A DNA stretch of 64,000 nucleotides from Octopus bimaculoides (GCF_001194135.2 NC_068981.1:20469580-20533579); one strand, 5' to 3'. Shown: positions 1,120-59,722, counted from the stretch's first letter. Numbers and translations are program-made. Notes: generated from the sequence alone by a model not told the origin.

Positions 1120-1757
1120 CTAGTACTGATATAATGACACATTTAGATAGTTTTCATCTTTATCCTGTTCCCCAACAGTTATGCACCAAAGTCTTAAGTC
1201 ACTGTAGAGCATAAGGTTCTAATTGTGCCTCTTTACAGCTTTCAATTACTATTGAAGTTAAGATGTAGGTCTACAGCAATATGATAATATCATGAAATAC
1301 ATTATTTTCCAATAGTTTTACACACACACACACATATATTTATATATATTATTTCTTTTATGCATTTCAGCCTCATGGCTACAGTCATGCTGGAGCACCA
1401 CTGTGACTATATAACCTTCCCACATCCCTCATATGTGGTTGATTTCTTCTGGGTGGTGAGTTTCATATCACGACCCTTGCATATGCTTTTACCTAGTCGT
1501 TGGCTTATTTGGTGTATGAGGGAGTTTGACACTGCCAACCTTGTCTGTCTCATGCCTGGATGTTGGTTTATCTGGCATTGTGGATAGGGGAATGTCTGGT
1601 TCCTTTTTGAAGACTTCCACATCTACATTGTTTAGGTTTCTTAATTCTTTTAGCAGTGCACTATACATACATGTATATATTTATATATGTGTATGTGTGT
1701 ATGTATATACATGTATAGATACTTTATTTATGTATACATACATTACATATATATATA

Positions 1758-1829
<72 letters not shown>

Positions 1830-1950
1830 ATAGTTTTTGTATATCAACTTGTCTAACTTGCTTATCTTTACATTTACTCCTCTACCTGCTCAAATTTAAA
1901 TCTCTTGAGCACTACGAAGTGTATTCTATATGGAGAATATCTGCCTCATC

Positions 1951-1984
<34 letters not shown>

Positions 1985-2487
1985 ATACATATATACAATA
2001 CATATATACATATGTGTGTGGATATATATATTCACATATGTTACATATATATATATATACACACGTGCACACACACATATATATATGGAAGTCCTAAACT
2101 CATTGAACTCATTGCATAAAGCAAAATTTTCAATCCTGTTTGTTTGCAGATAAATGACAATATCCTAAAATACTGCAGAGAACGGGGTTTTATACTCTCT
2201 TCCCCTTACTGATGTGTGCTACTTTTCTGAAATAACAGGGAGAAATTTTTAGGTCCTGTCTGTCGAGAGGACGTTTCAATGCCTTAACTTTGTGAGATAG
2301 CCATAGAAAGAGTATATGGTATTCAGCTTCTGCAGATACAAACACACTTTACTTACATCTTACAATGTTTCTGTAATCTTTTTTAGTCTCTTTGTTTTTT
2401 AGAATTCCATTGACTTTCACATTTAAAGTTATGGATATTTGTATTTATGTGCACAACACACACAATGTGTGTGTATGTATGTGTATA

Positions 2488-2529
<42 letters not shown>

Positions 2530-2680
2530 CACATATATATTGCACGCTTCTTACAGTATTAAGAGTTTTAGCTCTTATTTCTTACAATTATAGGTGCTTC
2601 GGCAGCCTCAGTCACAATAAGTGACAATAAAACCTTTTCTTTATGGTATTATATTGCACCTAGCTGTTTATAGTAATTTT

Positions 2681-2716
<36 letters not shown>

Positions 2717-4163: not shown

Positions 4164-4198
<35 letters not shown>

Positions 4199-4299
4199 AA
4201 AATCCTACACGATTAGGTGAAAAGCGCTTTATTTAATATGTGACATTAATAAAAATCTGTAAATGTACAAACATCCAGATTTCTGAGTACCTTAATTTT

Positions 4300-4347
<48 letters not shown>

Positions 4348-4509
4348 TACACTCACATACACATGTATATAGGATAGTCTATACAAACTAGAGAAATAGA
4401 TCTCTATAAAAAGTAGTCTTATTTTATATTTATTGCTGAGAAGCTACACCAGTGACTTAAGGGACTAGAGCTACAAGCCAAATCACTTGAAACTCTGTGT
4501 GTGTGGGTG

Positions 4510-5520: not shown

Positions 5521-8006
5521 CATGGAGAAGGATGATGAAGATTTTGATGATTTTTTTTTATAACCTTTCCTTTTGTAAAAAGTTCAATTTCCATTTGTTT
5601 TTCAGTCCACAAAGATATACTTTTGTTTTTGTTGTTTTTTTTTCTCTTTCAATATGACTGTATCCAGGAATATCAAAGCTGAGAGTTAATAAAAACATTC
5701 TTTCAATCAAATCTGTTTTCTACTTAATTATTAGCAATCTGATAAACTTGAGAGATTTAGGTTTTATACTAAAACATTTCCCAGAAATGTGTATTGTCAT
5801 CTTGTTCCATGTGTAGTACAGCACACAAATATGACTGCAATACAGTATGAATGTTAAATAAAGCTCAAATGTAGGCAGTAAATTGACAAAGTTGTTTGAG
5901 TATAGGATAGAATGCCTAATAGTATTCATTCCAACTCTCTACATTCTGAGTTCAAATCCTGCCTAGATCAACTTGCCTTTCCTCTTTTTAGGGTCAATAA
6001 AGAAAGTAGCTGTTCAAAGCAGTAGCTTGCTGGAATTGTCTTAGCATTGAATGGAATTCCTTCCACCTCTCTATGCTCTAAATTCAAATCCTACCTATGT
6101 CAACTTTGCCTTTTATCCTTTTGAGGAATGGGGAAGATAAAAAGAAGTATTTGTTCAAAGCAGTGGCTTGTCAGAATTGTTGCAGCATCAGATAGAATAC
6201 TTGTGACATCTGTTCCCGGTGTGTGCATTCTGAGTTCAAAATCCCCCTTTTCTCTGATGAACAAATAATATCAGCAATTTGAAGAACCAATGGAGACATA
6301 CTATCTTTGGTTCAATTATAAGTTTGATTTATAATGGAATGGAAGGTTTATGATACCTGTGGAGTGTCTCCTTCTCCCATTATAATTGTTTTGTAGTTTC
6401 AAGGAGCTGGAACAGGTCACCGATTTGTAATATCCGTGCAAAGCGAGGTAATGAGAATGGCTCCTTAGTACATCTCACGGTCAATACAATAAATATAAAT
6501 AGAACAATGCATATATGTGCCAGAGGGAAATAAGGGACACGACTAGGTAGAATGTTTAAGAGAAGAAGATTTATTGATATGATTGTGTGTGCGTCATATA
6601 TACAGAATAATAGACAGGCCATCATAAGAATAAGATGTAAGCGTATATATGTAAGCATAGACGTATGCTTGTTAAGAACATATAAGGATGGCGATGAAGA
6701 AGAGACAGGGAAAGAGTCTGTAGCCATCGAAGTGATGTGTAAGTTCATAGACACAAGAACGATAAATACCAGTTTGTAGTCAATTGTACACAATAGTTGA
6801 AATATTGTATCAAAAGTTGCAGTGATGATGCAGAGCCGGTTGTGATACGTGTCATATGTGAAGTTGTGGCTGTGATGCTGCTGCCTGGGTCACTTGGTAC
6901 AGGAGTTCTCCCAAGTTGTATATTCGCTGTTGATCCATGGTGAAGTAATTCACGAACAGTGCAGTGTTGTAACCAGTGCGAGTACGTAGAGAAATGTTGA
7001 CATTAAGAAGAATGGTGGCGACGGAGATGGAGGTCGCCAAATGCTGTTGGACGAAGTTGGTGAGTCTCCACGTGGCTGCTGTTGTGTTGTCGTTGGAACT
7101 GGCTGTGTCTTGTGTGGTCACTGGTTAGACCTTAAAAGGTCTGGAACCAAAAGACATTGAGACGATGAGAAGCTAGGGTTTTATAAGGAGTTGTAGGCTC
7201 AAAGCTAGGTGGAAAACAGGCTCACACATGACCTTATTTGAAGGCTGTGATCGGTTGGGTTGCATATTGACGCAAATAGAGCAATAGACAAATTGCGCCA
7301 ATACCAACCAACCAGAGTAGTAGACACAACAGGTTCCAAAATGCAGCCAAAGGCTAGCTGTTATCTACTACATTTGTATGTATGTATGTATATATAATAG
7401 AGAGGAGAGGAATTTCACTCAAGTATACACTACAGGTTGCTACCACCACCAGGTCAAACTTATAAATAATACAGTTGCTGTTGGATAACATGGAAGGGTA
7501 TGGATGTTAAGCCATAGTAAAAAATACCAGTATATTATTCATATCATGAAGAATATTTAAATTATTGAACGCTTCACTTTACCAGTGTAGGAAGCAGATA
7601 TCTTCATTGATCTTTTCAAAAAAACCTCATTTTAAAAATTTGCAATACATGGCATCTTATTTATAGCTTTAAATATCTTTATCTCTGAATATATTTTAAA
7701 AACTTTCCTCAAGACCAAACACAGCATGAAAACTAAAAAAGTTCAGTAAACCAATGTATATTTTATAAGTTTAAAACATAATCTTGTTGTTGAATAAATC
7801 TTCGGCTATACTCCAAGTGTTTGGCAAAACAGCATAAGTAATAGAAAGATATTTATGTCTAAAAACATAAATATTCATGGTTACAATGAATATTTTAGTC
7901 AGTCATGATGTGTTTGACAATTGCTAAAATTCTCTTGTAATTTGTATATCAAGAATATAACTGAGGAAAAGTACCCTGGGAAGTGTTCTGCATACTAAAT
8001 ACCCAT
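1120..8006 (-). CDS. Gene A: spliced orphan gene, predicted secreted Cys-containing protein of ~263 aa
   Basis: Phase-consistent AG/GT-bounded open exons on the minus strand: 8006-8003 (ATG G|gtattt); 7858-7812 ([16 protein letters not shown], signal-peptide-like); 5834-5770 ([22 protein letters not shown]); 5678-5565 ([38 protein letters not shown]); 5400-5360 ([14 protein letters not shown]); 4727-4644 ([28 protein letters not shown]); 2329-2210 ([39 protein letters not shown]); uncertain 1944-1878 (needs an atypical GAG acceptor); 1660-1493 ([25 protein letters not shown]...NKPTT); 1201-1120 ([26 protein letters not shown]). No family recognised. Confidence 0.6.
3967..4063. repeat. Perfect 28-bp inverted repeat (hairpin) with 41-nt spacer
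   Basis: ATTTAAAATACAGAGATGCCTGTAATAG (3967-3994) is the exact reverse complement of 4036-4063. Confidence 0.95.
4765..5082. repeat. Degenerate ~40-43-bp minisatellite, about 7-8 units
   Basis: Recurrent TGTTCACT(GGT)...(T)AATTGTCAGTAGACAG motif. Confidence 0.8.
5095..5325 (+). mobile_element. tRNA-derived SINE-like element (family E)
   Basis: tRNA-like head AGTGGTTAGGGTGTTG...GTTTCAATTC; a related copy lies on the minus strand at ~32990-33225. Confidence 0.65.
6392..7372 (-). mobile_element. Probable solo LTR in an intron of gene A
   Basis: TGTAGT...ACTACA inverted termini. On the minus strand: TATAAAA at 7185-7179 and AATAAA at 6575-6570. Higher GC/CpG than the flanks. No clean 4-6 bp TSD, only TTT on both sides. 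Confidence 0.5.
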
Positions 8007-15281: not shown

Positions 15282-16398
15282 ATGGCAGTTTATTTCATTT
15301 TGACTTATTGTGCTGTTTGGAGTATAATACTAAGTGAAACTGCATGCTGGGGATTACAGTCAAGAAATGGATCTAAACAGATAAAAGAGAAGCCCTCAAA
15401 TGTTAAGCATGCAGGTGAGGAATCTTTCCATATGTCTTCTGTCTACTGTCAAACAATATTAAAGAAATGTCTGTATAACAATGGTGAGAGAGAGCTTATA
15501 TATGTGGTGCAATTTGGGTATTCTTTACAATCCCTATACAGTCATGTGCTGTACAATCACACAACACAATATAATGGTGACGTTGTGAATGTAGAACAAG
15601 CAAGGAAAGAGGAAAAACAATTTTAGATTTAAGAAAAAAAAAAAACCAAGAGATTCAGAATTAAGTTTAAGCTATCTTGAGAGAGAATCTGAGAATATTT
15701 TCAAACAGATGGAAGTCATCATACTTGAATGTCCTGGTAGATCAAAACTGTTAAATTCTATGTTTGCATTTGGGATTGAAAAAATAGAGAAGCTTAGAGT
15801 GTTGTTGATAGGAGTTTCTGATGGTCTAATATTTAATTCAAAATTAAGACAGAAGCTAGCTATATGAGTATTTTTTAAATATTACCAATTAGCAGGTTAA
15901 AATTGAATTACTAATTAATAAGGAGGGGCTCCCTATAGATTATATACAAAGGGGTGCTGAAATGTTCCTGGCTTTGAGTAAAAGAAGAGACAGGAGGATT
16001 AGTTATGATTTTATTCAACATATTCCCCTCACAGATTCACACACATATTGCAGTAATCCTTCAGTTTTTCTACGCCATGTAAAAGAACTCGGAAGTTTAG
16101 GCCTCCAATGAGGCCTTTCACAATACCCTTAAAGCCAGGAATTTTACAGCACCCCCTTGTATATCATCATCGTCATTGCTTTTATGTCCACTTTTTCATG
16201 CTTACAAAGGTCAAACAGAATTTGTTGAGGTAAATTTTCTACAGCCCAGTATCCTTCCTTTTGTCAACCATAAGCTGTTTCCAAGCAAAACAATATTTTG
16301 CCATGACAAGACATGTTTTCATGGAAGACTAGAAATTAAGGACTCTGCTTATATGATTGTGATTCTCGTTTACAATTATTGCATAATGTTAAGAAGTA

Positions 16399-16435
<37 letters not shown>

Positions 16436-17472
16436 GCACGCACATAATCTATGCCACATTCCCACTAAAAACTTCACACTAAACATTAAACCCTTCACCC
16501 ATTCCTTTCTCCCTAAACTGAAACTGTCCAGAACTCTTTCCCCACAGAACTTCCTCACATCAATCTTACCAATTTAGGAAGACTTACAAAAATCATATAC
16601 ACTGCTCTAAGTCATCTATTATTTTTTTTTTTAATCCAACTTCTACTTCTATTGTTCCAGGAAAAGCCAACTCAAGAACCCGCTCCACAGCTGTTGAGTT
16701 GCCTAATTCAATCCGTGAATTGATCCTTCATTCTTTAGCTGTGACAATAAACAATGCAAAAGTGAATGAAAGCCAGGCTGCATTACTGCGTTGTAACAAC
16801 AAGATAAGCAAACTTATTTTGAAGAGATTCCCTGATGCTAAGTTCCTGTGGCTACATAATAACAAACATTTACGATTTAATGGTTTTAAATACAGACTGA
16901 AGAATGGGGACTTACTAATAAAACATTTCAAATCTTTAGCTGATAGTGGAGTGTATACCTGCCAAATGGTTTACAAACAAAAATGGAAGGTCACTCTAAC
17001 GATTTATTCACTGACAGTGGCAGCTTCATCTCCCAAAGACTTTCCACAACTGCACTTTACTTCTGGATCTACAGTTAAAATTGATTGTAACAGTGATATA
17101 CTTGGGGATTTGTACACTGGATCAACAAAACAGTGGACTATAAATGGGAAAGTTTTGAAACATGTTGCTAAAACTCGTGCCAATCATGACATATTAGATA
17201 CTGTATCTTCTGTTAGTGAAAACCAGTCTGGAATATGGATCTGTATGGTCCTGAGAAGAGATGATCCAAGAAAATTTTGGATTACTAATAAACTAAATGT
17301 AGTTATTGATCCTCCAAAAACCTTTTGGCAAGCAGTGATGAAATCTCGTTATTTTCCACTTTCCCTGACAAACATTATAGGAGTAATTTTCACTTTCCTG
17401 ACTTTAGTACTTTGTTTAGTTATAATTTCTGTGAATCGTTTTATTATAGCAAAAAACAAAAATAAAATCTAG
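15282..17472 (+). CDS. Gene B: signal peptide + two Ig-like domains + TM + 12-aa tail (~314 aa)
   Basis: Exon 1 15282-15414 (MAVYFILTYCAVWSIILSETACWG...; donor CAG|GTGAGG, phase 1) joins in frame to exon 2 16661-17472 (acceptor TTCTATTGTTCCAG|). Ig1: LLRC...FLWLHN...DSGVYTC. Ig2: VKIDC...KQWTIN...SGIWIC. TM: LTNIIGVIFTFLTLVLCLVIISV. AATAAA at 17560-17565. An alternative donor ACA|GTAAGT just upstream of the ATG could mark a different first exon. Confidence 0.88.
15947..16159. mobile_element. Tc1/mariner-type MITE in the gene B intron
   Basis: ~29-bp imperfect TIRs CAAAGGGGTGCTGAAATGTTCCTGGCTTT / AAAGCCAGGAATTTTACAGCACCCCCTTG with TA on both sides. Confidence 0.8.
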
Positions 17473-18759
17473 ATTCTTGGTTTTTTTAAAACCTTTCTCT
17501 CCCAAACAACTATTTTAATTGAAACTCCGGTGACTCCTTGTTCTTAAGATTCACAATGAAATAAAAGTCTAAAATATACATTTAGAAATTTTTGATAAGA
17601 AAATATAACAAAAGGAAAAGGAGTTAATTTTTATTAAAAATATGGTATTTATTTAATCTAAAATAATTGTTAATTTCACAAAGTTTTATTCAACATTGAT
17701 TTGGTCTGGCAATGTTGGCTAGCTATCATTGTCCGGAAATTTTGACTGGATAGACACAGAATTTAGTTGGTATGTTGTCTGCTATCTATACATAACAGTG
17801 GAGTCATCACTGCATCTTAACAACTTGCCTACTTCTGAAACTATAGCAAATTCCAAGAGTCAGAGTTTTTGAAATTTCAAGAGTCAAACTGGTCTGGGTT
17901 TTATAAAACTAAATTAACCAAGTGAGTCATTTATTGTTCCTTTTATAGCTCATTCACCTTCCTCTTCTCCCTCTTCCAGCCCTCTACTTCATGTACCTAC
18001 ACCTAACTGGATTCCTCTATGTGTCTCATGTTTAATAATATGTCACATTTTTAATGGTGTATCAAATCTACAAAGGAAGTACCGCATGCCTAATGTTGTA
18101 TTTCTTGTTAAATGCACATAGCTATATGAGGGTTGTTGATAAAGAGACTGAATAGGTGCAACATTAGTGAGAGGATGTTAGGAGAAGAGGTGAAAGGAAA
18201 TCTAATCCAAAGAGTGACTGAGGAGAAGGAGAGAGAGAGAGAGATGAGCAGTTATCTGATGGTTGTTGGTAAGGGTATGGAATAGAAACAACATGAGCAA
18301 GATATATTTTTAGTGTGAATATTAAATGTTTATCCCTGTTTTCTATGCACATTCAAAACAAGTGTTTCAGAATCTCCAAAGGTGGTGTGAAACAAGGAAG
18401 AAAAAAAAATGATAGGGAGAGGGAGAAGGAAGAGAAAGGGAGGGAGACAGAAAGAGATAGAGAGAGAAAGACAAAGAGAGGGTGAAAGCAAGAGCAATAG
18501 ATGAGTGTGAAAGATGTCAATGAGAAAGGAGAAAGGAATGTGAAAGAGAAAATAATAGCAGAGAAACAAGGTGATGGAAAAAAAGTGTAAGAAGTAAAAG
18601 AAAGGGGAGTGGGTGAGACAGAGAGTCAGAGAGTAATGGATGTCTGTGAAAAGTGATAGAGACATAATATGAGAGAGAGAGGAAGTCATGGAAAACAATA
18701 AAGATAAGGACTAAAGGAGAGAAGGAGTGATGGATATTTCAGTTTGTAAGCTATTTTTC

Positions 18760-31096: not shown

Positions 31097-32098
31097 ATAA
31101 GACATTACATAAATTTCTTTTACCTTTGTATATATTTTTCTTTTCTGCATTTTGTACTCCATGTAAATATATGTCTCAAACCTGTGTTTATCTACTCTAC
31201 TGCCTCTATATTGATAAGTTATTTTACTACACCTGTTTTCAGATACCATTAATAGAAGCCATTTTGATCATTCTCCCAAAGAACAGATAAATTTTAACAA
31301 AAATATCACAGAACTCAAACCTTTAATGAAAAGACAGAAACGCCATGGTGAAACATTATTTCCTTTACCACCTAGATTGGTTTTGCTGGCAGTGGTCTAT
31401 CTCAAACAGGTTTTCCATCAAATCAATATTAGTGCTTATCATAGTGTAACCCTGTCTTGTGATAATGTTATATCCAGAGCTATCTATGATGAATTCCCAA
31501 TGGCCATCCTGTTCTGGGAATTTAATGACCAACCTTTTAATATTGATCCATCTTCCATGCTTTATAAATCCATATCTAATGAATTGGTCCTCATCTCAGC
31601 ACAACCAAAGAACAGTGGTGTTTATACATGTCAAATGACACAGAATTTCCAGTGGGTTCAAGTGGTGGATGTGTTTGTCCTACAGGTATATTCAGAAGAA
31701 GTAAAAACATATTACAAAGAGAAAACCAAACTGCGTTTGAGCTGCCATGGTGAGGCACTAATGGAAATATTTCCTGGTGTGAAAAGGATATGGTATCGTA
31801 ATAATACTGCGGTATATATTAATGATAATGTTCAATCAGATGTTGTTGATATCCCTTCAGAAAAGGTGAGATACTAATTTTTAATAGGGTTTAACCTCAT
31901 AGCCTCATAGCAAATAACCACCACTGTCATCAGTGATTTCATCATCATCCTAATCATTATCATTTTCTTGATCATCATCACTAACATCTTCAGGTATGCA
32001 TTTCTGTGTATTATATTTGTGTCTATTTTATGTTAACAAGTGTATGCATGTAAGGGCACCTGTGTATGTAAGTGCATGTGTATGCATGTGAAGTGCAC

Positions 32099-32189: not shown

Positions 32190-32494
32190 CTTGTGTATGT
32201 GTCTGTGTAGATGGAATTGTTGCTTCCTCACAATGCTCTTCTTACCATTAATATAGTTTGTACTTCATGTTTCAGTTACATGACTATGATCAATGGCAAT
32301 GTTGTATTGTTCAAGGTCACAGACACTGGATTACAGCAAACTATACACTTTTATTGATGCCATCCATCCCATTTACAATGTCTACAGTCTCCCTAGTAGC
32401 TCTACTACTCTCGTCTGCCATTCTAGTGGCTTTCATCACTTTAACTGTCTGCTTCAGTGTTCGCAAGAGAAAAAAAACTGAAATAAAAGATTGA
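31097..32494 (+). CDS. Gene C: paralogue of gene B, two Ig-like domains + TM + 10-aa basic tail
   Basis: Exon 31243-31865 (acceptor CTGTTTTCAG|, donor AAG|GTGAGA, phase 1->0) has RQKR, Ig1 VTLSC...LFWEFN...NSGVYTC and the first half of Ig2 LRLSC...RIWYRN. Exon 32276-32494 (acceptor TGTTTCAG|, phase 0) has QWQCC...HWIT, TM VSLVALLLSSAILVAFITLTVCFSV and tail RKRKKTEIKD*. A candidate signal-peptide exon ~31097-31162 (KFLLPLYIFFFSAFCTP, phase-1 donor T|GTAAAT) is less certain; the start codon was not located. Confidence 0.85.
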
Positions 32495-34426: not shown

Positions 34427-36005
34427 TTAGAAAAGTTTCTCAAATAGTTCTTCCACATCATCTCCGTTAGGTGTTCCTTCTGTGGTTTGTAATTTCAATG
34501 AAAAGATAAAATGTGAAAGTAATATATATATACACATAGTTAAATTTATAAAGATTAAGTATAGCATATGAATATACTGATGTCTTTCAATAATCAGTAC
34601 CAAATTAAGAAAATGCAGTCATACCATACAGGGTGTCCACAAAGTCTGGGTACATGGGATTAACACATACTTTAAGAAATTATTATTTCTTATATTCAAT
34701 TGTTTATGTTATGATTTTATTTGCTCTCTGTACCCACATGGGGATTAACACATACTTTAAGAAATTATTTCTTATATTTAATTGATTATGTCATAATTTT
34801 ATTTACTCCATGTACCCAGACTTTGTGGACACCCTGTAGTACAGATATTTGAAATACTTTTCTGATAACTTTTGTCATTTGTATATATGATAAATTCATT
34901 CAAGGGGTTCCAGTCAGTTTTATATCATCAAAATATCTGTATTAAATCAGATACTATATTGGAAATAAACTTCAGAAATGTAATTTATACAAAATTTTTA
35001 CATTTTTGTAAGCTAGTCTAAATGAAAAGACAGAGAAAAGAGTGAAGCACATAGACAATGGAAGATTTTGACAGTTAGAAACTGAGTATTAAATGAAAAA
35101 AAGGACTCCTTACATGTGTAAAGTAAAATGATATAAATAATTTTATAGTGATTTTAAGTTATGCTGGTAGTTGACATTATCAGATTACAAAAGTACTCTA
35201 CTCTGCTTATACCATTTATACATTGGAGTTTTTCAATGGCTTGATTTGATATGGGGTAAGCAGTACACATTTGAAATACATGGGTTAGATTTTTAGAAGG
35301 TTGCAAACTACTTTAGTTTGAAATGATGTACATAGTTAAATAGGGGAGAAGGAGGAGGGGGAGAAAATGGTTATTTTAAGGAGATACATAAACTCGTGTG
35401 TGTGTATGCATGTGCATGCACATGCACATATGTCATCTTCATAATTTTAATGTCCACTTTTCCATGCTTGCATGAGTCAGATGGAATTTGCGGAAGCAGA
35501 TATTCTATGGTCACCTGTTTCCACACAAAGTAATATTTTCCCTTGGCCATATTATACTTTTCACAAATGACTGAAAATTAAACAATACCACTTGCATGAC
35601 ATAGATGGTTATTTACAACTATCACATGAAGTCAAGGCAAGGGTACACACACACACGCACATGCTCACACACACATACACACACAATGGGTGGTTGGCCT
35701 GGGGCTATAGTAGAAGACACTTAGCCAAGGTACCACACAAAGGATTGACCCTGAAATTAAATGGTTAGGAAACAAGCTTCTTGACCACATGATAAGCACT
35801 GTTTATTGGGAACATTTTACACTAAAGACAAGCATATGGCAATGCATAACAAGGTACAATAGCATACAGTTTGAGAAAATTCAAATTGTCCATTTGTTGG
35901 ACAAAATCAATTAAAACAACCTGCATGTGTGCATGTATGTGAGTGTGTGTCACTGAAGCCATTCATACATATATACATAAATAAATAAACTGAATGATAA
36001 ATTTC

Positions 36006-41664: not shown

Positions 41665-44600
41665 CGCACATGCATGTGTTAATCTGACCTTATTTTGTCA
41701 ATATTTGTCTAACTTTGCAGTATAAGTGCCTTGGAAATGATCAAATAATAGTACTAGTTATACCATCAGACACCACCTCTCTTCTCTTAATAGATATATG
41801 TTTACTTTCATCCACTGAAATCAAAGATTCACACTTACCTTCATTAGTTTCCAAGCGTTCTTTCACTTCATCAATAAGAGTATCGTCACTTTCATTTGTT
41901 GTATTGTTAGCTAGACCAGTTTTTGATTGTAGAATTTTCAGCATGCTTTCATCATTGTCAGTGTTCTCAACATTATCTCCAGCGTTAGTAACAAGTGGTT
42001 TTAGTGTGCTAACAACATTTAGTTCTGTTGGCTTTGCATTTGATTCTGTCAGGTTAGCAACACTTGATCCTGCTGATAAAGTAGCATTTGATTCTTCCAC
42101 CCCACCAAGATTTGGTTCTTCTGCATTAACAACATTTGATTCTGTTAGGTTAGCAACACTTGATCCTGCTGATAAAGTAGCATTTGATTCTTCCACCCCA
42201 CCAAGATTTGGTTCTTCTACAGGAACAACATTTGATTCTGTCAGGTTAGCAACACTTGGTCCTGCTGGCAAAGTAGCATTTGATTCTTCCACTACACCAA
42301 GATTTGGTTCTTCTGCATTAACAACATTTGATTCTGTCAGGTTAGCAACACTTGATCCTGCTGATAAAGTAGTATTTGATTCTTCCACCCCACCAAGATT
42401 TGGTTCTTCTACAGGAACAACATTTGATTCTGTCAGGTTAGCAACACTTGGTCCTGCTGGCAAAGTAGCATTTGATTCTTCCACCACACCAAGATTTGGT
42501 TCTTCTGCATTAACAACATTTGATTCTGTTAGGTTAGCAACACTTGGTCCTGCTGGCAAAGTAGCATTTGATCCTTCCGTCCNNNNNNNNNNTGATTCTT
42601 CCACCACACCAAGATTTGGTTCTTCTGCATTAACAACATTTGATTCTGTTAGGTTAGCAACACTTGGTCCTGCTGGCAAAGTAGCATTTGATTCTTCCAC
42701 CACACCAAGATTTGGTTCTTCTGCATTAACAACATTTGATTCTGTTAGGTTAGCAACACTTGGTCCTGCTGGCAAAGTAGCATTTGATCCTTCCGTCCCA
42801 CCAAGAATTGGTGCTTCTGCATTAACACCATTTGCTATCGTCGCTTTAGTAACATTTGTTTGTACTGAGCTAGTAACATTTGATTCTGTTAGCCCTTCCA
42901 ATAATTCAACTTCTTTTTCTTCATCTTCAAATTCTTTTACGAATCCATTGAGAAGCAGTACGTTGTTTTTAATTTCACCTACTGTCTTTTTCTCTTTCTC
43001 AAAAATCTCCTCCAGTTTTTCCTGTTTGTCTTCTTCTGAAGTACTTGCATTCTGATTTACACTAGGCATATCAGCTACCTCAGTGTTATTTAATGTCTCG
43101 TTTACTCCAATTCCATTAGCGATCTCACTTTTAGATGCATCCAGGATGGCAGCTGAAATTGTAAAATTATACTTAATTTATTACAAGATCATATATCTGT
43201 TTACGGATGTATGTATGTATTTTTGCATAACTCTACTGAAAGACTGTGAATTTCTACATATAGACTGTGTAATTATACAGACATCAACAAAATAGACTGT
43301 GAATTTCTGTAAATAGATTATGTAGCTTAACAAATAGACTGCATAGTTCTGGAGATAGACTGTTTAACATTACAGTTAGAGCATCTAACTCTACAAATAC
43401 ATTGTGTGAATTTATACAGATAGCAAGCCAGTCACAAGACTCTGGTGATTGGGAAGGAAGGGGGTTTCAGAATATTCTGGGTGGGCATTAATTCATAATA
43501 ATGCTAAAGTGAAGTTTTGGAATAAGTATATCTCCATAAGGGTTTTTTGACAATTTATGTTTAAAGGTTGATTATAAACCAGTGAAAAAATTTTTCAAAA
43601 TTCCTATTTTTTAAGCCCCTCCTCCTATTCATCCTACTCCTCCTTCTCATATGCAACTGGCCATAACTTTTGCATTTTTAACCTTTTATGAATTATTTTA
43701 AACATCAGAGATGTTTAAATGCTTTCAATTTTTGCTTCTTCAACTTACCTCTGTTTCAAAAGTTACATCAAGCTATAACTTGTTAAGATGTATGGCTTAA
43801 GGTTTTAAAATTATGCTTTAGGGTTATGGTATAGGTTCAATGTTAGGCCTAAGATTTGCAGTTAGGGTGTAGGGTTAAATAAAGAAAAAGCGTATTTTTA
43901 CAGCACAATGATTTTACTTGTTTCAGACATAAATATGAGGAAATTGTCAAAACTTAAATAGAATATAAACTCTGTCAATTCTAAAACATTGTAGTGTTTT
44001 CAATTTTTATTATTGCACATTATTTTATGAAATTTAACAATTTTAGTAACATTATTTTAATCAATATATGAGCAAACAATTTATTTGGTCTGGCCTGTAT
44101 TTAAACCAAATATATTACAACTTCTGAAATTTGTGCTGATACTGAAAATTTCTGAAATTGTTGTAAACCAATTTAATCAACTAATTAACACAAATATTAT
44201 AAAATATTTGTAATCTTCTTGAGCTGGAACAGAAAATATTCAAAATACTTCCGTGTTCAGTTTTTTTAATATCTATTCATGAATGCAAGTTAACAAGGTT
44301 GTTTTTTTGTTGATGTGTCATAAAAAGATAATAGGGTGTAAATATATGAGACAATGTATAGAAGATGACTTGCAAGAAGCATTGCAGCAAATGTGAGGAA
44401 TGCAACATACAATTTGTGGATATCTGGAAAAGCTCTAAATGAATATAGTGAAGAACAGATATCTGGCAGTTTCTTAAAAGTAATATTTTCTAAAATGTAA
44501 TGATGTAACATTTACAATACATAATTCATTGTAAAATGAGCTGTCCAAATAGTTTATGCTCATGAGTTTATGCTGAAATGGGAGATAATCTTGAAACTTC

Positions 44601-45606: not shown

Positions 45607-47749
45607 ATGTCTGTGTGTGTCCATACATATATATATGGTATCTGTGTGTGTGTGTGTATGTATGTGTGTATGTGTATGTATGCATGTTTGTAGGTATGTG
45701 TGTGTGTATATGTGTATGTGCATATATATGTATGTGTGTATGTGTCCATACATATATATATTGCGTTTGTGTGTGTATATGCATGTTTGTAGGTGTGTGT
45801 GTGTGTGCATGTGTGTATGCATGTGTGTGTGTGTGTGTGTGTGTGCAAAATATTGTTCTTGTTTACAGAACAGTTAAATAGCATCTGGTTCTTTTTCTCT
45901 GCTTAGTTTAATTGGCCAGTATTCTTTCATGAAATTCTAAGGTGGTCAGTATGTGGTCTAACCCCTTTATATATGTGAGTGTGTCTGTGTGTGTGTGTGC
46001 ATGTGTGTGTGTGAAGATGGAATCAGAAGTAGTATTGATAAAATGTAAATGAATGTGTGTAGGGGGAGGTACATATGTATATGTATTCTTCTGAGCATCA
46101 GTAATATATAAACCTACACATCATCAGCTCTGTTTGTAGTTTTATTTTTTATTGTTGTCGTTGATGTTTTTCATTTTTGCTTTTATTCAGTGTCATTTTT
46201 GCCTATATTAATTATTTCCCTGGGGAATTTTTGACCAGTCTCTGCTGTTCACTTTGTTCATGATTTTAAAATTTAATTTTCATTCTGGTTTAAGAAGAAA
46301 AGTTACTCGGGCTTCAAGAAACGTATTGCAGGAACATTTTTGTAAACTGTATTTTCAAAATCTGAGGGTGTACCATTGAATAGTGATGTGGAGAATGCCA
46401 TCCAGTAACCCCTTCCTTAATGACAGGCCCAAACGATAGACTGATTAAGTGAAACTTTACAGATAAAGTGTGAGAAACTAAAATCTCATTGCACATCATT
46501 AAGCTAGTCAACCAATCAAAATTATTTTCTACTTACTGTAATTCTTACAGGAAGATTCCATTTTCTCAGTAATATGTTCCTTTAAAGCCTGGAAATGGCT
46601 AGCCAATGACTCCAACATATTAGACTGCTCCATAAACTTTTCCTGGTTGGGTGGGGCATCTGGAATAGGAAAAAAAGGAGATTTTTATCCCTTCTGTTTC
46701 TAACAAACTCTATTAACTGTTAGTATGTGCATTTTGGTTTCAAACAGAGGAGAAGTGGTAGAATCCATGTTCTTAGAATAACCTTTGAGACTGATAAAGT
46801 CAATGTTGAAGTCAGTGTTCTATGGTTGATGTATTTTGGAAAAGCGTAGACAAAGATGTTGTCCAGGAGAACTGTGGCTGTAGACAAAAAGGATCAGGCT
46901 AACTGTTTAGTACAGTATTTTATGGAACTAGATAGATGAAAGGAGGAGATGTATGTGCATTTGAATGAACTTGGATGCAGTAGGTACACAATTAACTAGT
47001 TTAGTGTATCAGAGGTTATTATACAAGTGATACCAGAGATGGAGAGAAGAAGCAACATCTCTCTATACCAGTGTTTGTTGCATGGCAAAGATTCAATCTT
47101 TGCCATTTAGCTTTGTTTGGATGCAGTTTAGATGTGTATGTGACATCAGAATTATCCTAAATATATATAGAAGAGATTTGCAGTGGGTCAATAAGTTATG
47201 AAGACTGAAGCATTTTTCCACCTTAAAGGGGGAATTTTGTCTTCTATTTGTTTCAGTCATTTGACTGAAGCCATGCTGAAGCACCACCTTAAAGGGTTTT
47301 AGTCGAAAAAATCACCCCCGGGGCTTATTTTTTATAAGCCTAGTACTTATTCTAATGGTCTCTTTTTGCTGCCAAACTATCAATTGTTTAAAATCCTTTG
47401 ACGAATAATATTTATGAAAAAAGGAATAATTACTTGATATCAAAGTTTGTAAGTAGCTGTTTATGAGAAACAAGGAACTCAGGATGCAATCCACATTAGC
47501 TTTCACTTTATAACTTATGGTTCCTCCAGAGAATTTCTGACAGAGCTCAGCCAAAGTTGCATTTTCATATTCTGAAACAAAACAAAATGTACAAATTATA
47601 AATTCTTGTCATAGATTCTTGGCATTCTTACACAACATACCAATAGCTTCAAAATCACAACCATTTTGCCTGAAAAACATTCTACAACAAAAATCTAATA
47701 AATTGAAAGCATACCAATACACAAGAAAGATTAAAACATTTGAGATATC

Positions 47750-48666: not shown

Positions 48667-51600
48667 CACACACACACACACACACAATGCAGAATTATAG
48701 ACTAATAGATCCATTTCAGCCAATTTTGCCAATCATGAGAGTTTAAGAAAAAAATCATGTATGGGTACCTATTTGAAGGGTTGGCAGAATCAACTGATAG
48801 GATCTGTAATACTGATTCTCTCCTTCTTAAGGAATGTGATTAACCATGCAGATCCTCTACAAGAATCTGTTCTGACTCCACCCCATCTTCTTCTAGTCCT
48901 GCAAGTTACAGGGTGACCTCAATAATACTGACAGCATGAAGAAAAGCACCCAGTTACACACTGTAAAGTGGTTGATGTTAGGAAGCTACATCCAGCCATA
49001 CATACCATGCTAAAGCAGACACTGGAGCACAATGCAGTCCTTGGAACCATCAGCTCCTGTTACACTGTCCAACCCATGCCAGCATGGAACATGATCTTTA
49101 AATAATGATGATGATATATAATCAAAACAGATAACCTTGTTTGGGGAATAGTCAAGAAATATACTGCAAGCTTTTGAGAACACAGCATGATAATGAAACT
49201 AATTACAGGATTTCAAACTAAGTTCCCATCAAAGTTTGCTTATTTTATTGATGTAACTAACACCAAGAAGTTTATAACTCTTTCTTCTCTGACAAGAACT
49301 TCAAAATTTTGAAAAAGAGAGAGAGTGTGTGTGTGTTGGAACTAATTAGTATTGCACTTTTAATAAATGATTCTTACTGGTCATTATTTGCACTGCATCC
49401 ATGTATATTGAGTCCAGAGTGGTCTTCATGGGATATATATAGGACTGTAGCATGATTGAATAAATTTAAACTGAATTAGTACACTGGCCTATATTGTGTC
49501 TAAACTAGACAGTGCTAAATAAAAAACAATATTTCAAATTAGCACTCATGTCAATTCATTTAGCGAACTGACTAAATTATATTCCATATTATAAAAATTT
49601 AACATATAAAATAAGTCACCAAGTACCATTTGTCCAGCTTCTATTCCAGTTGATTAATCAACAATAAAGTTTTTCTGCATTCATTTCCTTATCAATAATT
49701 TGGTTGACAAGTTGAATTACTCAGCCTGTAGATTAAGCGTTCAAACCTAATTGAAAGTAATAAACATTATTCCACTATCTCAACTAGCAGAAGAATTATC
49801 ACTTCTAATTTGAAAAGTTGCTGTTACAAAAATATATTGCACTAATTCCTCACATCATTATTCCAGACATACATCTAAATTTATAGAATCCAAGAATGGA
49901 TACAGCATTCAGTCTAAAATACTGATTCTAGTCACAAGACCTCAGATGTGTAAGGAATAGGAACGAGACTGTTACTATATTTAGCCCTTCCTAAGGGTAT
50001 GAATGAAGTGAAATAGTAACAAACAAGAATCAAAATTCAGAGTGCACTGAATTAACAAGGAGCCTATGGCCACTGACAATTTGGTGAGGGGATTGGAGTT
50101 ATTCTTTGTTGTTTTTTCGTCAAAAATTGAATAAATTAGAATAAGAAATTATACCTTTTGTTTCCAAACTACAGATTTTCAACTTTGGTAAGTGATCTTC
50201 TGCCATTGCTGAAAGAAAAACAAAATGATGAATATATTAGCATGTTGAAAAAATCTTGTTAACAGAATTGATTTCTAACACTGGCACAAGGCAACAAAAT
50301 CTGAGAGAAGGGTATTGTCAACTTGATGGTGATAATTGGCTCCAGCACATGACTGATGCTACATTTGTGGAATCTGAACTGAGAGTTTAAAGGAATATTA
50401 AGATAACATAAAGCAGTTTGTCTACCATTGTACAGATTCTTATTTCTTTATTGCCCACAAGGGGCTAAATATAAAGGGGACAAACAAGGACAGACAGAGG
50501 GATTACGTCGATTACATCGACCCCAGTGCGTAACTGGCACTTAATTTATCGACCCAGAAAGGATGAAAGGCAAAGTCGACCTCGGCGGAATTTGAACTCA
50601 GAATGTAACGGCAGACAAAATACTGCTCAGCATTTCGCCCAGTGTGCTAACGTTTCTGCCAGCTCGCTGCCTTGTCTACCATTGTACAGATTCTGTCAGT
50701 CCCTCACTCTTCTTGTTAATAATACTGGTTTCCAATTTTGGCGAAATTTGAGGGGAGGGGTGATGTTGATTACATTTGACTGCAGAACTCAACTGATACT
50801 TATTTTATTGACCCCGAAAGAATGAAAGGCAAAGTCAACCTTAGTGGAATTTGAACTCAGAATATATAGACAAATGAACTGTCACTAAGCATTTTACCCA
50901 GTGAGCTAACGATTCTCCCAGCTCACCACTCTCTTCTTATTAATAATATTAACATTGTAACAATGTAATAGACAGTCCAAGTCAAAAGTCTGAATGCACT
51001 GGTGCAAATAAGTTATTATATTGTAGTTGATGGTAATAATGATCATCATCATTGTTTTCACAATCACTTTTATATGCTTGCAGTGGTCAGACAGAATTCA
51101 TTGAGACAGATTTTCTACAGTCAGATGACCTTCTGCTACCAAGCTTCACTTGTTTTCAAGTAAAGTACTATTTTTCCATGACCGCACATGTTTCTGTGGA
51201 AGATTGGAAACAAATGACAGCTTGTATGATGGTGACACTCGTTTACAACTATCACATGATATCTAGACAAGCAGGCACAATCTAACACACACACACACAC
51301 GAAGGTTAATAGAACGAGCTTCTTCTAGTTTCTCTCCTCCAAATTCATTCACAAGGCTTTGGTCAGGCTTGTTCAAGATGTGCATTCAGACTGAACCCAA
51401 AATTATGTGATTGGAAAACAAACTTCTTAACCACACAACCATGCCCAGATGAAGTGGTGAGAAAGGATCTTTGAACGCTGGACCTCACTGAGGAAACGAC
51501 AAGGGATCAGAAGATGTGGCAATTTGCTGTACTTCTCTCTCTCTTCATTCTCTCTCTCTTCTTCTCACTCTCTCACTCTCTTCCTCTTCCTTTTCCTCTC

Positions 51601-55000: not shown

Positions 55001-58000
55001 TAACCGACAGAGTGCCATGATGTATATATGTATGTGTGTAAGTATGTATGTATGTATGCATGCATGCATGCATGCATGCATGCATGTATGTATGTATGTA
55101 TGTATGTATGTATGTATGTATGATTGCATGTATGTATGTATTATGCATATGTATGTGTCTATGTTTTCCCTTTGTCTTACTTCTTTTAATATATGGTTAT
55201 GTCAAAGCAGCGAGCTGGCAGAAATGTTAGCATGCTGGGCAAAATGCTTAGCAGTATTTCATCTGTCTTTACATTCTGAGTTCAAATTCTGCCGAGGTCG
55301 ACTTTGCCTGTCATATTTTGGGGGGTCGATAAATTGGGTACCAGTTGCGTACTGGGGTTAATCTAATCGACTGGCCTCCTCCCCAAAAATATCAGGCCTT
55401 GTGCCTAGAGTAGAAAAGAATACATGGCTATGTTTTTAGCAAAAAATATGAGAAATATTATTATTTGTTATACAAAATATGAAAATTTGCAGCCATTTAC
55501 ATGCACATGTAGTCTAACAGTTTGTTCAAATTTTAGCTCATTAGCTGAATATAATTTTCTTCAGACCATTCATATATGCTCTCCCAGCACTGTGATGTGT
55601 GTATTGTCAACTTGTAGATAATTGCTCAAATTTTAAATTGTTAAATGAATGGGCTCCCAGTCATTCATATACATTTAATTCATTCATAGTCTGCTCACTG
55701 CCATACCATATTTGTACCTAATACATTACATTCTTACTATGAAATGTAAATAATACTCACAATAGTTTAGAATGCTTACTCGCATTTCTTCCAGAATATC
55801 AGCAGAACTTCGGAGCAAATGATGATGTGTCTTATTGCCTTAAGGGAAGAAAATAAAAGAAATAAACATTGCTATATCATTATCACAGTTATAATATCTG
55901 TAAATGTTTTAAGTATATTAGTAGAGTTAATGTTAAATTATAATAATTGATCAATGTTTAGTTTTAGTCTCAAGTTTTAAGATTTTCCAAAGATATATTG
56001 AATCACAGCAAATATCCTCAAATCTATCTGAGGAAAATTTTTTAAATAATGTAATTCAAAGGAGAATATATTGGAACGGTTTCTTTTTGCCTTACCTAGA
56101 TCTGAATTCAGAATAGCCAGATAAGCAAGCATTCATCAATTATAAGTGTCCTTTCATGTTACAACAGGATAAGTAAATTTGGTTATCAAAACTATTCTTT
56201 GTTGGTGATACAATATATTGCTGGTGGTTGAATATCAATTATCAAACTTTCAATTAATTAATATTACTGCATTTTATATGTTGAAATAACTGTAGGTTTT
56301 TAGTAGCCTCAGGGCTCAGAAAGGCTTTAGAGCCAATTGTGATATATTTGCATTCAAAAACTGTTTAAAAAAATATACATATTTACCGTTTTGTAAATCT
56401 AAATTAAACTGAGATATGACTAAGACAAAATTTGCTTCATTAAAAATTATCTGAGCAAATTAATCAAAGTTGCTACTTAAAAGAAAAGAGTTAGCAATGG
56501 AATTTTGTTTGCACCAGCAAAGCCAAAATCAAAACAAGAGCTTAGGAAATAGGAATGGATTAAAAAAAACATTTTCAGATTTAATTGTAGATTTTAAAAG
56601 CTTTAACATGACTGTGAGTATTGTCAGAGGTGTTAAGGCATTGTAGGAAATATTATCTAAAGTTTCTTCTACAACAGTGACAACTTCTTATTTAAACAAC
56701 CACAACAAAGATGTGTTGCATAATGCTTTGTCAGGAATGTCTTTCCCCCATTAGGTTTAGTTGGTCTTCAATTTCATGTAAGCATATATCTGATGTCCCA
56801 TTAAATGCAGGTGTGTTGGTGTTGTTTGATACCAGGTTAACTTTGATCCTGAAAATGTATGATCAAAGTCATTCCAGTGATGACCATTCCATCTTTCATT
56901 TAGATATAGTACATTCCTTTTTCAAAATGGTAGATGCAAGCTAAAAGAAATTTGCCTGTTGTTTCAAGCAGGTCATACAGTCCTGAGCCTACATTAGAAA
57001 TTATGTTTTTAGACAAGCCACTTTATTTTCTACATGACTCAGTTCACTTATCAGTTGGCAATAACGATCTGATTACCTGAGAAAAAATACTTTGTGTACT
57101 TCCTCATTCAAGCACTATCCTTTAACTCTTTAGCATTTAGTCCAGTCATATCCAGCCTAAATATTCTACCTGTTTTATGTTCAAAATTACTAGATCCAAC
57201 TTCTTGCACCTACCCTACAATGTCATTGTAAAAATATACAAATACACCATTGAAATCTTGAAGCTACAAGATAAAGTATGACTAATTCAAAACAATGTGA
57301 ATATATAAGCAATTCATTTGACAAAGAAATCTGAATGCCAAAGGGTTAAAATATCTGTTTTGTTATTTAAGAGTCATTTATTTTCATTTAACAATGAGAC
57401 TATAATATTCACTACTTCAGTAAAATCCATACATTTAAACAAATAGATTTTTGAAATAAAATATATTGATTTTTGTCTTAGTTTCCAGAAATATTCTGCC
57501 ATGTTTCCAGTGTGAAAATTGTGAAAGAAAGAAGGGATTAGAATAATGAACAAACTTTGGCTATGATATTTTTCAGGTACTTACCTGGAACTGACTTATG
57601 ATCAAGGTTTTTTAGAAGTTCTTTAAGTTCTGAAAATGAACCATCCAAAACATTTTCAATGTCTTGATGTGTTTCTTCTGTAATATAAAAAAATACCTTT
57701 TATATCATCTTAATATTTATATTAGCTTATCATCATTACTAACCTTCTTGTTACTTATAACTATGCACATGCATTTTTATATAGATAATCCTATCAACCC
57801 AAACTAGTATAAAATATGGATGCTAAATGATGATGATGATGATGATGATGATGTTATCCTCCATTCTCCATTCGTCTTCCACAAACATCTCCCAAAGTTA
57901 ACAAAAATTTCTTCAGCAGTACCAGAGCACCACATGTATCAATGAAAACTCAGTTCCAAATGCCAGGCCCCATAATTTCTAATAATCTCACATGGTAACC

Positions 58001-59722
58001 TAACATATATAACCTTGTCAAAGCTGCATTCTGAAAAAGAAGCTGATTCTAGAAACTGGCACTCTTTCCAGGGGTAGAAAAATGCTTGTTGAGGGTTAAC
58101 TTCGTCCCCGAATCAGTTGCTGACTCTGAACAAGACTCAGGTAAACATATGAGACTGAGCTGTTGCTGCTATGTGCACAAACATTCTAGGGCACATCTCA
58201 AAACAGCTGTCTAGTTGATTGACAATAATTCATTTACCAACACACCAACTATAGATTCACAGACACACTATTTTCTCTTTCTCTCTTTCTCTCTCTCTCT
58301 CCCTCTCTTTCTCTCATAATAATAGATTTTGTTCTTCTGAACTAGAAAACTGCATACCACCTCCCCCAATATACCCAAATAACCAACAAGACAATCTGCT
58401 ACAAGCCACAGATCTGATCCATCGATGAAGTATGATTCTAGCTACATGAAATTATCGCAGTAGATAGCGATATAGCAGATGTGAGAGAGGCTCAGAGAAA
58501 CTGAAGGAAGTGGGAAGAAAGGAACAATATCAGGTAGCTTAGAAAAGTTAAGTGTCAGGTATGCATAGTAAGACGGGATGATTGTCACCAGCGTTGCCTT
58601 ACTGGCACTTGTGCCGGTGGCACGTTAGAAAATTATTTGAGCGAGGTCATTGCCAGTGTCGCTGAACTGGCTCCTGTGCAGGTGGCATGTAAAAAACACC
58701 ATTTTGAGTGTGGCCATTGCCAGTACCGCCTGACTGGCCCTCGTACCGGTGGCACGTAAAAGCACACACTACACTCTCGGAGTGGTTGGCGTTAGGAAGG
58801 GCATCCAGCTGTAGAAACTCTACCAGATCAGATTGGAGCCTGGTGCTGCCATCCGGTTCACCAGTCCTCAGTCAAATTGTCCAATCTGTACTAGCATGGA
58901 AAGCAGACGTTAAACGATGATGATGGGGAAAGTTCAGGGGAAAATTCCCTCTGCTAGCAGGTTTTATAATGGTTTGTATGAAAGGTGGTACAAACATTGA
59001 ATGAGTAGGATGTGTGAAGAGTAGAGAAAAAATGAGGCAACAATGCACTGCTGGATGCATAATGTTAATATGCATGAATGACAGAACACAGGTGAGCTGA
59101 GAAGAAAACTGGCTGTAAGAGAAATCATGTATAGTGTGCTAGAGAGAAGACTGAGCTAGCACAGATATGTGATGTGAATGATGAATGACAGTTGGGTAAA
59201 GATTTAACAAGCAATCCAAGTGAAAGAAACCTGTAGTAGAGGACGACTGTGGAAGATATAGGAAGAGGTAGTGAAAGCTCATCACACAATACTGAACTTC
59301 TCGAAGGAGATGACAAGAGAAAGCAATAGTAGTGTTCAACCCATACAGGCCTAAAGTGACATTAACAATGATGATAACAGTGATGATGGTGGCAATGATG
59401 ACAATGGTGGTGTTGATAAGGATGATGACAACAACAATGACGACAACAATGATGACAACAATGGCAAATATGACAATGATCAAAATGAGGACAATGATGA
59501 TGATGAAGAATTTGATAAAAAGGATATCTGTTAGAAACATTCCACAAATGTGATTCAAATCCCATCACCGCCACACCAAAATAATATCAAAGAAAGTGTA
59601 ACACCAACCAGCAACTTCTGTCTTGTTACTTTCCTGAAATAGAACAAAAAGAAATAAAAGTAAGTAACATGTTTAAAGTAGGGAAAATACTTGATTGCTT
59701 ACGTGTGGAGGTGTTTAAGCAT
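34427..59722 (-). CDS. Gene D: multi-exon secreted protein with helical/Cys-rich N-region, 32-aa glyco-repeat domain and short acidic C-tail
   Basis: Candidate exons, nearly all with phase-1 junctions: 59722-59703 (MLKHLH-T); 59633-59569 ([21 protein letters not shown]); 57677-57585 ([30 protein letters not shown]; strong sites); 55838-55761 ([25 protein letters not shown]); 50208-50155 ([17 protein letters not shown]); 48255/48235-48196 (..[13 protein letters not shown]; junction unresolved); 47694-47641 ([17 protein letters not shown]); 47571-47434 ([16 protein letters not shown]...LQTLIS); 46659-46549 ([11 protein letters not shown]...KMESS); 43152-41764 (repeat exon); 41296-41288 (9-nt micro-exon, tentative); 34479-34427 ([16 protein letters not shown]). 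The gap at 37350-38033 may hide exons. Confidence 0.6.
34629..34836. mobile_element. Tc1/mariner-type MITE with internal tandem duplication
   Basis: Perfect 29-bp TIRs CAGGGTGTCCACAAAGTCTGGGTACATGG, TA at 34627-28 and 34837-38. The interior is two diverged ~85-bp direct copies. Confidence 0.9.
36659..37104. repeat. Local tandem duplication, two ~190-bp copies at ~250-bp period
   Basis: ACATAATAC...AGAATTCTC.CATTAATACAGTAG...ACAGATTTGCATTTCAAACATTTAACATAAT...CAACTATC at 36659-36845 and 36910-37104. Confidence 0.85.
37350..38033. other. Assembly gap (largest of several; others at 11451, 19372, 23128, 26379, 39059, 42583)
   Basis: Run of N. Several of the gaps (11451, 19372, 37350) directly abut (TA)n tracts. 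Confidence 1.
38750..39500 (-). mobile_element. RTE-clade LINE ORF2 C-terminal fragment
   Basis: [43 protein letters not shown] / MLHGNE...[13 protein letters not shown]...[22 protein letters not shown]. Confidence 0.85.
39696..40903. repeat. Long inverted repeat pair (~310-340-bp arms) around a SINE-containing ~555-bp loop
   Basis: 39696-40036 is the reverse complement of 40592-40903. The inner ends are nearly identical (GTAAACCATTGTCTGACAATAAAGAGAACATTAAAAATAAT). Confidence 0.85.
40060..40436 (-). mobile_element. tRNA-derived SINE (family D)
   Basis: Head GGCGCAATGGCCCAGTGGTTAGGGCAGCGGAC...GTTTCGATTCCCAGACCGG; second copy at ~54640-55020 (+). Confidence 0.85.
41764..43152 (-). CDS. Large repeat-encoding exon of gene D
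   Basis: Open frame over ~1.39 kb, apart from a 10-N gap. Acceptor ATAATTTTACAATTTCAG| at 43152, donor GAT G|GTATAA at 41764, both phase 1. Glu-rich coiled-coil-like start, 32-aa repeats, ends [12 protein letters not shown]. Confidence 0.9.
42040..42900. repeat. Coding minisatellite: 96-bp unit, 8 copies plus a degenerate one
   Basis: Period measured 42089->42185 = 96 bp. Unit SNATL(P/S)AG(P/S)[11 protein letters not shown](NA/PV)EEPNLG(V/G)VEE. Confidence 0.95.
43240..43420. repeat. Degenerate ~21-bp minisatellite just outside the repeat-exon acceptor
   Basis: Recurrent ATAGACTGTGAATTTCT-like units. Confidence 0.65.
50441..50671 (-). mobile_element. SINE (family C) with 23-bp TSD
   Basis: TTGTCTACCATTGTACAGATTCT at 50418-50440 and 50672-50694. 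Confidence 0.9.
51740..52020 (+). mobile_element. Diverged family-A (RTE-tail) element
   Basis: GTGGTTGGTATTAGGAAGGGCATCCAGC core duplicated; GTTAAACGATGATGAT tail. Confidence 0.7.
52080..52440 (+). mobile_element. RTE LINE ORF2 C-terminal fragment
   Basis: [13 protein letters not shown]...[37 protein letters not shown]...[13 protein letters not shown]. Confidence 0.85.
52843..54540 (-). mobile_element. Tigger/pogo (DDE_1) transposase relic
   Basis: [15 protein letters not shown] (HTH), [71 protein letters not shown]. Several frameshifts and stops; TIRs not identified. Confidence 0.9.
54640..55020 (+). mobile_element. tRNA-derived SINE (family D)
   Basis: Colinear with the reverse complement of 40060-40436. 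Confidence 0.8.
55203..55420 (+). mobile_element. Family-C-related SINE with degenerate 15-bp TSD
   Basis: GCGAGCTGGCAGAAATGTTAGC head. AATATATGGTTATGT (55188) vs AATACATGGCTATGT (55419). Confidence 0.75.
58570..58925 (+). mobile_element. Family-A (RTE-tail) element
   Basis: Three GCCAG..GCC..ACTGGC..GTG subrepeats, core and (GAT)n tail. Confidence 0.85.

What the first reader, a model, noticed from the sequence alone, without database searches (positions are those of the whole stretch)
1120..59722. Four unannotatable signal-peptide genes in one ~60-kb cluster: a possible lineage-specific cell-surface/secreted module
Seen: every gene I can reconstruct in the window starts with a signal-peptide-like segment (A: [17 protein letters not shown]; B: MAVYFILTYCAVWSIILSETACWG; C: KFLLPLYIFFFSAFC; D: ...[16 protein letters not shown]). 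None matches a housekeeping family I recognise. A and B are head-to-head, B and C are tandem paralogues, C and D are tail-to-tail. B/C are adhesion-type 2xIg receptors without signalling tails; D is a heavily glycosylated repeat protein with a basic cleavage site. Inference: this combination fits a co-expressed, fast-evolving module such as gamete/spermatophore surface recognition or epithelial/immune surface proteins.
Basis: partly seen in the sequence, partly recalled or inferred. Interest (0 to 1): 0.75.

Follow-up and report, generated by a model that had tools for sequence, protein, structure and literature searches.

The report
Two octopus secretory genes, not four
This 60-kb stretch of the Octopus bimaculoides genome holds two annotated but unstudied genes, not a four-gene module: an immunoglobulin-type membrane protein gene with two alternative bodies behind one shared signal-peptide exon, and a fast-evolving, heavily glycosylated protein whose orthologue is found in octopus skin mucus.

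Summary
The window is Octopus bimaculoides chromosome CM046601.1 (100% identical, same N gaps).

'B' and 'C' are one gene, LOC106882169. A single signal-peptide exon (15282-15414) is spliced either to cassette B (16661-17472) or to cassette C (31243-31865 plus 32276-32494). Each cassette encodes two Ig domains, a membrane span and a 12-residue basic tail. The cassettes are 21% identical. O. sinensis is annotated with the same two isoforms.

'D' is LOC106882335 on the minus strand. Exons 2-9 lie between 59633 and 34427, and exon 1 with the true signal peptide lies outside the window. It is a secreted, acidic protein (pI about 4.2) with at least eight 32-residue repeats and 29 N-glycosylation sequons.

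'A' is a 20-codon ORF of a kind that occurs about 146 times in the window, and no annotation supports it.

D evolves faster than its own introns (dN 0.196 against 0.077). Its O. vulgaris orthologue was detected in skin mucus with 7 unique peptides. Co-expression was not tested. Modest interest.

The parts
15282..15414 (+). LOC106882169 exon 1. It carries the start codon, the signal peptide MAVYFILTYCAVWSIILSETACWG and a further 20 residues. It ends in phase 1 at the donor CAG|GTGAGG and is shared by both isoforms.
   Evidence: The spliced protein is identical to XP_014788245.1 and to the first 44 residues of XP_052821562.1.
16661..17472 (+). Cassette B, the proximal alternative last exon. It has a phase-1 acceptor and encodes Ig1 (C89-C145), Ig2 (C187-C239), a membrane span, the tail NRFIIAKNKNKI and the stop codon. 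Joined to exon 1 it gives the 314-aa isoform X2.
   Evidence: The ORF is intact in O. sinensis and in a third octopus (SRR11869385 contig).
17560..17565 (+). AATAAA polyadenylation signal 88 nt after the cassette-B stop codon.
   Evidence: Invariant in three octopus species.
31243..31865 (+). Cassette C, first exon. It has a phase-1 acceptor and encodes a linker containing RQKR, Ig1 and most of Ig2. It ends in phase 0 at AAG|GTGAGA.
   Evidence: Exact match to P0002 / XP_052821562.1 / UniProt A0A0L8I8X7.
32276..32494 (+). Cassette C, second exon. It encodes the rest of Ig2, the membrane span, the tail SVRKRKKTEIKD and the stop codon. With exon 1 and the first cassette-C exon it gives the 324-aa isoform X1.
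59609..59633 (-). LOC106882335 (D) exon 2, encoding ESNKTEVA plus one nucleotide. Exon 1, with the signal peptide MACQNGQRLLMVLLLTILTSLITAAPVTE, is not in the window.
   Evidence: In O. sinensis, exon 1 lies about 25 kb upstream of exon 3.
57585..57677 (-). D exon 3
   Evidence: GT-AG.
55761..55838 (-). D exon 4
50155..50208 (-). D exon 5
47434..47571 (-). D exon 6, the conserved core ([35 protein letters not shown]...).
46537..46659 (-). D exon 7
41839..43152 (-). D exon 8. It encodes an acidic linker and at least eight 32-residue (96-nt) repeats, each with two N-glycosylation sequons. It ends at the donor G|GTAAGT.
42583..42592 (.). A 10-N assembly gap inside the D repeat array. The frame is preserved and the repeat number is unknown.
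34427..34479 (-). D exon 9, encoding (E)[16 protein letters not shown] and the stop codon. It lies 1.9 kb from the cassette-C stop, so the two genes converge.
   Evidence: The collinear exon is present in O. sinensis.
7806..7868 (-). Rejected: it is no more than chance would give and no gene is called here.
31111..31155 (+). Rejected: intron sequence with no ATG in frame, just upstream of the cassette-C acceptor and its polypyrimidine tract.
59570..59617 (-). Rejected: it is the wrong frame of exon 2 and reads through into intron 2.

Best explanation
The region holds two unrelated, convergent, Octopus-restricted secretory-pathway genes.

(1) LOC106882169 encodes type I membrane proteins of the immunoglobulin superfamily.
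- Shown: one promoter-proximal exon supplies the start codon and signal peptide. It ends in phase 1. It is joined in the annotated products either to cassette B or to cassette C.
- Cassette B is a single exon with its own stop codon and a conserved AATAAA signal. It lies inside what is intron 1 of the long isoform.
- Cassette C is two exons, 14 kb further on.
- Each cassette encodes a complete body: a linker, two Ig domains, a membrane span and a 12-residue basic tail. The two bodies are only 21% identical.
- Inferred: the choice is a competition between splicing and polyadenylation at the proximal cassette and skipping to the distal one. One promoter would then put either of two very different adhesion or recognition ectodomains on the cell surface. 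With no signalling motifs in the tails, these would act by binding or through partner proteins.

(2) LOC106882335 encodes a secreted protein.
- Shown: a signal peptide (encoded outside the window); a roughly 175-residue region predicted to be helical, with four conserved cysteines; an acidic linker; at least eight 32-residue repeats, each with two N-glycosylation sequons; and no membrane span.
- Shown: the O. vulgaris orthologue is present in skin mucus.
- Shown: the coding sequence diverges 2.6 times faster than its own introns, and the repeat unit differs between species (32 against 31 residues) while being uniform within each species.
- Inferred: it is a hydrated, negatively charged, mucin-like coat component of the skin surface under diversifying selection, for example from microbes or from recognition functions.

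'Gene A' is not a gene. The two real genes are neighbours, not a demonstrated module.
For: Source of the window: 100% identity to O. bimaculoides CM046601.1.

LOC106882169:
- The exon 1 plus cassette B splice that I built from the sequence equals XP_014788245.1 exactly.
- Exon 1 plus cassette C equals XP_052821562.1 and UniProt A0A0L8I8X7, two entries with different accessions.
- The 314-aa and 327-aa isoforms of O. sinensis LOC118764145 start at the same coordinate.
- Splice phases match: 1/1 for both cassettes and 0/0 inside cassette C.
- There are no further cassettes in the window.
- Ig_2 and ig Pfam matches are above the gathering cut-off. The Cys/Trp/Cys pattern is conserved in both cassettes. 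The best solved-structure matches are CEA (1.5e-10), contactins, DCC and CEACAM1.
- Purifying selection acts on both cassettes, with omega 0.47 and 0.55.
- The polyadenylation signal after cassette B is invariant in three species.

LOC106882335:
- Eight exons map with GT-AG borders. Orthologues exist in O. sinensis and O. vulgaris.
- 29 sequons, pI 4.2 and four conserved cysteines.
- dN 0.196, dS 0.155, intron K 0.0765 over 21 kb, binomial p = 2e-20.
- The orthologue A0A6P7T161 is protein 56 of 510 in the skin mucus proteome, with 7 unique peptides, 29 PSMs and 15% coverage (PMC10138644).
- No Pfam, PDB or remote relatives.

Gene A:
- No protein in 5.8 billion clusters matches any minus-strand open segment of 28 aa or more in window 1-9000 that passed my low-complexity and microsatellite filters.
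- No gene is called within 10 kb upstream of exon 1 in either species.
- The chance count of such peptides is high.
Against: - No RNA reads were examined. The shared-exon architecture rests on annotation models, phase compatibility and the absence of any start codon in cassette C.
- The O. vulgaris annotation models cassette C alone (CAI9715875.1, 281 aa, no leader).
- Signal peptides and membrane spans were judged by eye and by hydropathy, not with SignalP or DeepTMHMM.
- AlphaFold models of both proteins were poor (pLDDT 41-43), so the folds are not confirmed structurally.
- For D, omega against its own dS (1.26) is not significantly different from 1 (Fisher p = 0.29). Relaxed constraint on parts of the protein is therefore not excluded.
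- The mucus sample also contains cellular proteins such as myosin and actin, so presence in it does not prove secretion.
- The current gene calls listed for the O. bimaculoides record do not include D, possibly because of the gap in exon 8.
Confidence: 0.72

Rival explanations
1. B and C are two separate tandem genes. Cassette C would have its own first exon, not yet annotated, with a start codon and signal peptide somewhere between 17.5 and 31.2 kb. The exon 1 to cassette C join in the annotations would then be a rare or artefactual read-through splice.
For: - The O. vulgaris annotation models cassette C alone (281 aa).
- The 13.8-kb interval contains three assembly gaps and many chance signal-peptide-like ORFs.
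- I examined no RNA evidence.
Against: - Database entries under separate accessions (UniProt A0A0L8I8X7; RefSeq XP_052821562.1) for O. bimaculoides, and RefSeq for O. sinensis, all join the same leader exon to cassette C.
- Phase 1 matches phase 1.
- The stand-alone O. vulgaris model lacks any signal peptide, which a type I Ig membrane protein needs.
Confidence: 0.15
2. D is a decaying or functionless locus drifting neutrally. Its high divergence would reflect loss of constraint and repeat instability, not selection.
For: - Omega 1.26 is not significantly different from 1.
- There are no detectable homologues or domains.
- D does not appear in the current gene calls for the O. bimaculoides record.
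- Repeat number and repeat unit length vary between species.
Against: - Reading frames of 518 to 644 codons are modelled intact in O. bimaculoides, O. sinensis and O. vulgaris, with the same eight exons mapped in the first two.
- There is a strongly conserved core exon and four invariant cysteines.
- dN exceeds the intron divergence 2.6-fold, which neutrality does not predict.
- Seven unique peptides of the orthologue were found in skin mucus.
Confidence: 0.05
3. Four co-regulated secretory genes, including a real gene A head-to-head with B, form a functional surface-recognition module.
For: - Both real genes are secretory, lineage-restricted and adjacent in two species.
- D is fast-evolving.
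Against: - A has no support in any annotation or protein database, and its only evidence is a peptide type expected by chance.
- B and C are one gene.
- The two real genes converge and therefore cannot share a promoter.
- The B/C products were not found in the mucus proteome files that hold D's orthologue (one file was truncated when stored).
Confidence: 0.03

Closest known systems
Adhesion-type immunoglobulin-superfamily membrane proteins (CEA/CEACAM, contactin and DCC-type Ig domains)
   Same: Signal peptide, tandem Ig domains with the canonical Cys...Trp...Tyr-x-Cys pattern, and a single membrane span. The best solved-structure matches are CEA (E 1.5e-10 across two domains), contactins, DCC and CEACAM1.
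   Different: There are only two Ig domains and a 12-residue tail, with no ITIM/ITAM, FN3 or GPI features. Similarity is at the generic domain level, so no orthology to any named family is implied. No relatives were found outside Octopus by word-seeded search.
Loci with a shared 5' exon and a nested upstream unit, such as the cholinergic locus (VAChT inside the first intron of ChAT), and alternative 3'-exon genes such as Drosophila lola (my own knowledge)
   Same: One promoter and leader exon serves two alternative downstream coding bodies. The proximal body sits in the first intron of the distal one and has its own polyadenylation signal.
   Different: Here the shared exon is coding, because it carries the signal peptide. 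The two bodies are paralogues from a tandem duplication, not unrelated proteins (VAChT/ChAT) or dozens of alternatives (lola).
Clustered protocadherins and UGT1A (variable first exons, constant 3' exons; my own knowledge)
   Same: Tandemly duplicated alternative exons that encode whole ectodomains, used one at a time, inside a single transcription unit.
   Different: The polarity is reversed: the 5' exon is constant and the 3' bodies vary. There are only two alternatives, and there is no evidence of stochastic choice.
Mucins and mucin-like mucus glycoproteins
   Same: Secreted, with tandem repeats dense in glycosylation sites. The orthologue is found in mucus.
   Different: The repeats carry N-x-S/T sequons and are acidic. 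They are not Pro/Thr/Ser-rich O-glycosylated repeats: by my count of the repeat shown, about 28% of each unit is P, T or S. There are no VWD, C8, TIL, cystine-knot or SEA domains.
Rapidly evolving repeat-bearing recognition proteins of molluscs, such as abalone VERL (my own knowledge)
   Same: Repeats are uniform within a species and divergent between species. The coding sequence diverges faster than neutral sequence.
   Different: There is no sequence or domain relationship (no ZP-N). The tissue evidence points to skin mucus, not gametes.

Membership tests
Immunoglobulin superfamily (B and C cassettes) | A profile match to Ig-domain models above the curated threshold | tested here: met
   Cassette B: Ig_2 35 bits (cut-off 27) and ig 28.1 bits (cut-off 21.8). 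Cassette C: Ig_2 29.4 bits and ig 24.3 bits.
Immunoglobulin superfamily (B and C cassettes) | An intradomain Cys-Cys pair about 50-60 residues apart, with the core Trp and the Y-x-C motif, in each domain | tested here: met
   C89, W108 and Y143-T-C145 in the first domain, and C187, W203 and C239 in the second, are invariant across cassettes B and C and O. sinensis.
Immunoglobulin superfamily (B and C cassettes) | A beta-sandwich fold | tested here: inconclusive
   The AlphaFold2 model has mean pLDDT 43. Strands are predicted in both domains but at low confidence, so I ran no fold search.
Type I single-pass membrane protein | An N-terminal cleavable signal peptide and one C-terminal hydrophobic span followed by basic residues | tested here: inconclusive
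   The sequence shows both: MAVYFILTYCAVWSIILSETACWG, then IIGVIFTFLTLVLCLVIISV followed by NRFIIAKNKNKI in B, and LVALLLSSAILVAFITLTVCF followed by SVRKRKK in C. No SignalP or TMHMM-type predictor was available.
   Cassette C opens at a phase-1 acceptor with no in-frame ATG. The annotated products of two species use the exon at 15282.
Alternative-last-exon gene with a shared leader | Phase-compatible acceptors on both bodies, and a stop codon and polyadenylation signal of the proximal body's own | tested here: met
Alternative-last-exon gene with a shared leader | Both junctions observed in RNA | not testable with these tools
   Only annotation models (RefSeq Gnomon, UniProt/Ocbimv22) were available, not reads.
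Mucins (D) | Pro/Thr/Ser-rich O-glycosylated tandem repeats | tested here: not met
   By my count of the repeat [32 protein letters not shown] shown, about 28% of the unit is P, T or S. It is acidic and carries two N-x-S/T sequons.
Mucins (D) | VWD/C8/TIL, cystine-knot or SEA domains | tested here: not met
   No Pfam family at E <= 0.01 for P0004 or P0006.

The most novel reading that the evidence does not exclude
The fast-evolving, species-specific skin-mucus glycoprotein D is a surface identity cue. For example, it could be part of the skin-borne signal that stops an octopus's suckers from grasping its own skin, a behaviour known to me from the literature and not tested here. The adjacent two-bodied IgSF gene would encode its membrane binding partner or partners, making the pair a small recognition locus that has stayed adjacent in the two species compared.
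Probability: 0.04. Interest if true: 0.75.

Novelty: new member of a known kind. Interest (0 to 1): 0.28.

Why it matters
The result corrects a four-gene 'module' to two annotated genes, and it shows how AT-rich, microsatellite-rich cephalopod DNA produces convincing but false signal peptides.

Two points could interest cephalopod biologists. The first is an Octopus-restricted IgSF gene in which a tandem duplication became two mutually exclusive complete bodies behind one signal-peptide exon. This is a compact case of how alternative ectodomains arise. The second is an orphan, heavily N-glycosylated protein of skin mucus whose coding sequence changes faster than its own introns. That makes it a candidate for host-microbe or recognition-driven selection at the octopus skin surface. 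Neither point opens a long-standing question.

Tried and rejected
I reached the locus through a homology search instead.
- Gene A: I concatenated 82 minus-strand open segments (3,610 aa, microsatellites masked) from window 1-9000 and searched 5.8 billion protein clusters. Nothing scored E <= 0.001.
- Conservation of the A region: synteny with O. sinensis in the fetched locus stops at window 13325, so it could not be tested.
- AlphaFold2: the B isoform gave pLDDT 43 and the D N-terminal region gave pLDDT 41. Both were too poor for a fold search, so I ran none.
- D N-terminal profile against 1.84 billion representatives: it found only itself and a spurious multi-stretch match to a 1,640-aa repeat protein.
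- D against solved structures and Pfam: nothing.
- Literature searches by gene, RefSeq and UniProt identifiers in main texts: no hits.
- D orthologue in other proteomes: absent from the stored supplements of the ink and salivary-gland papers.
- Logan contig L004: I hoped it was a transcript, but it is genomic DNA of a third octopus.
- Further Ig cassettes in the window: none found.
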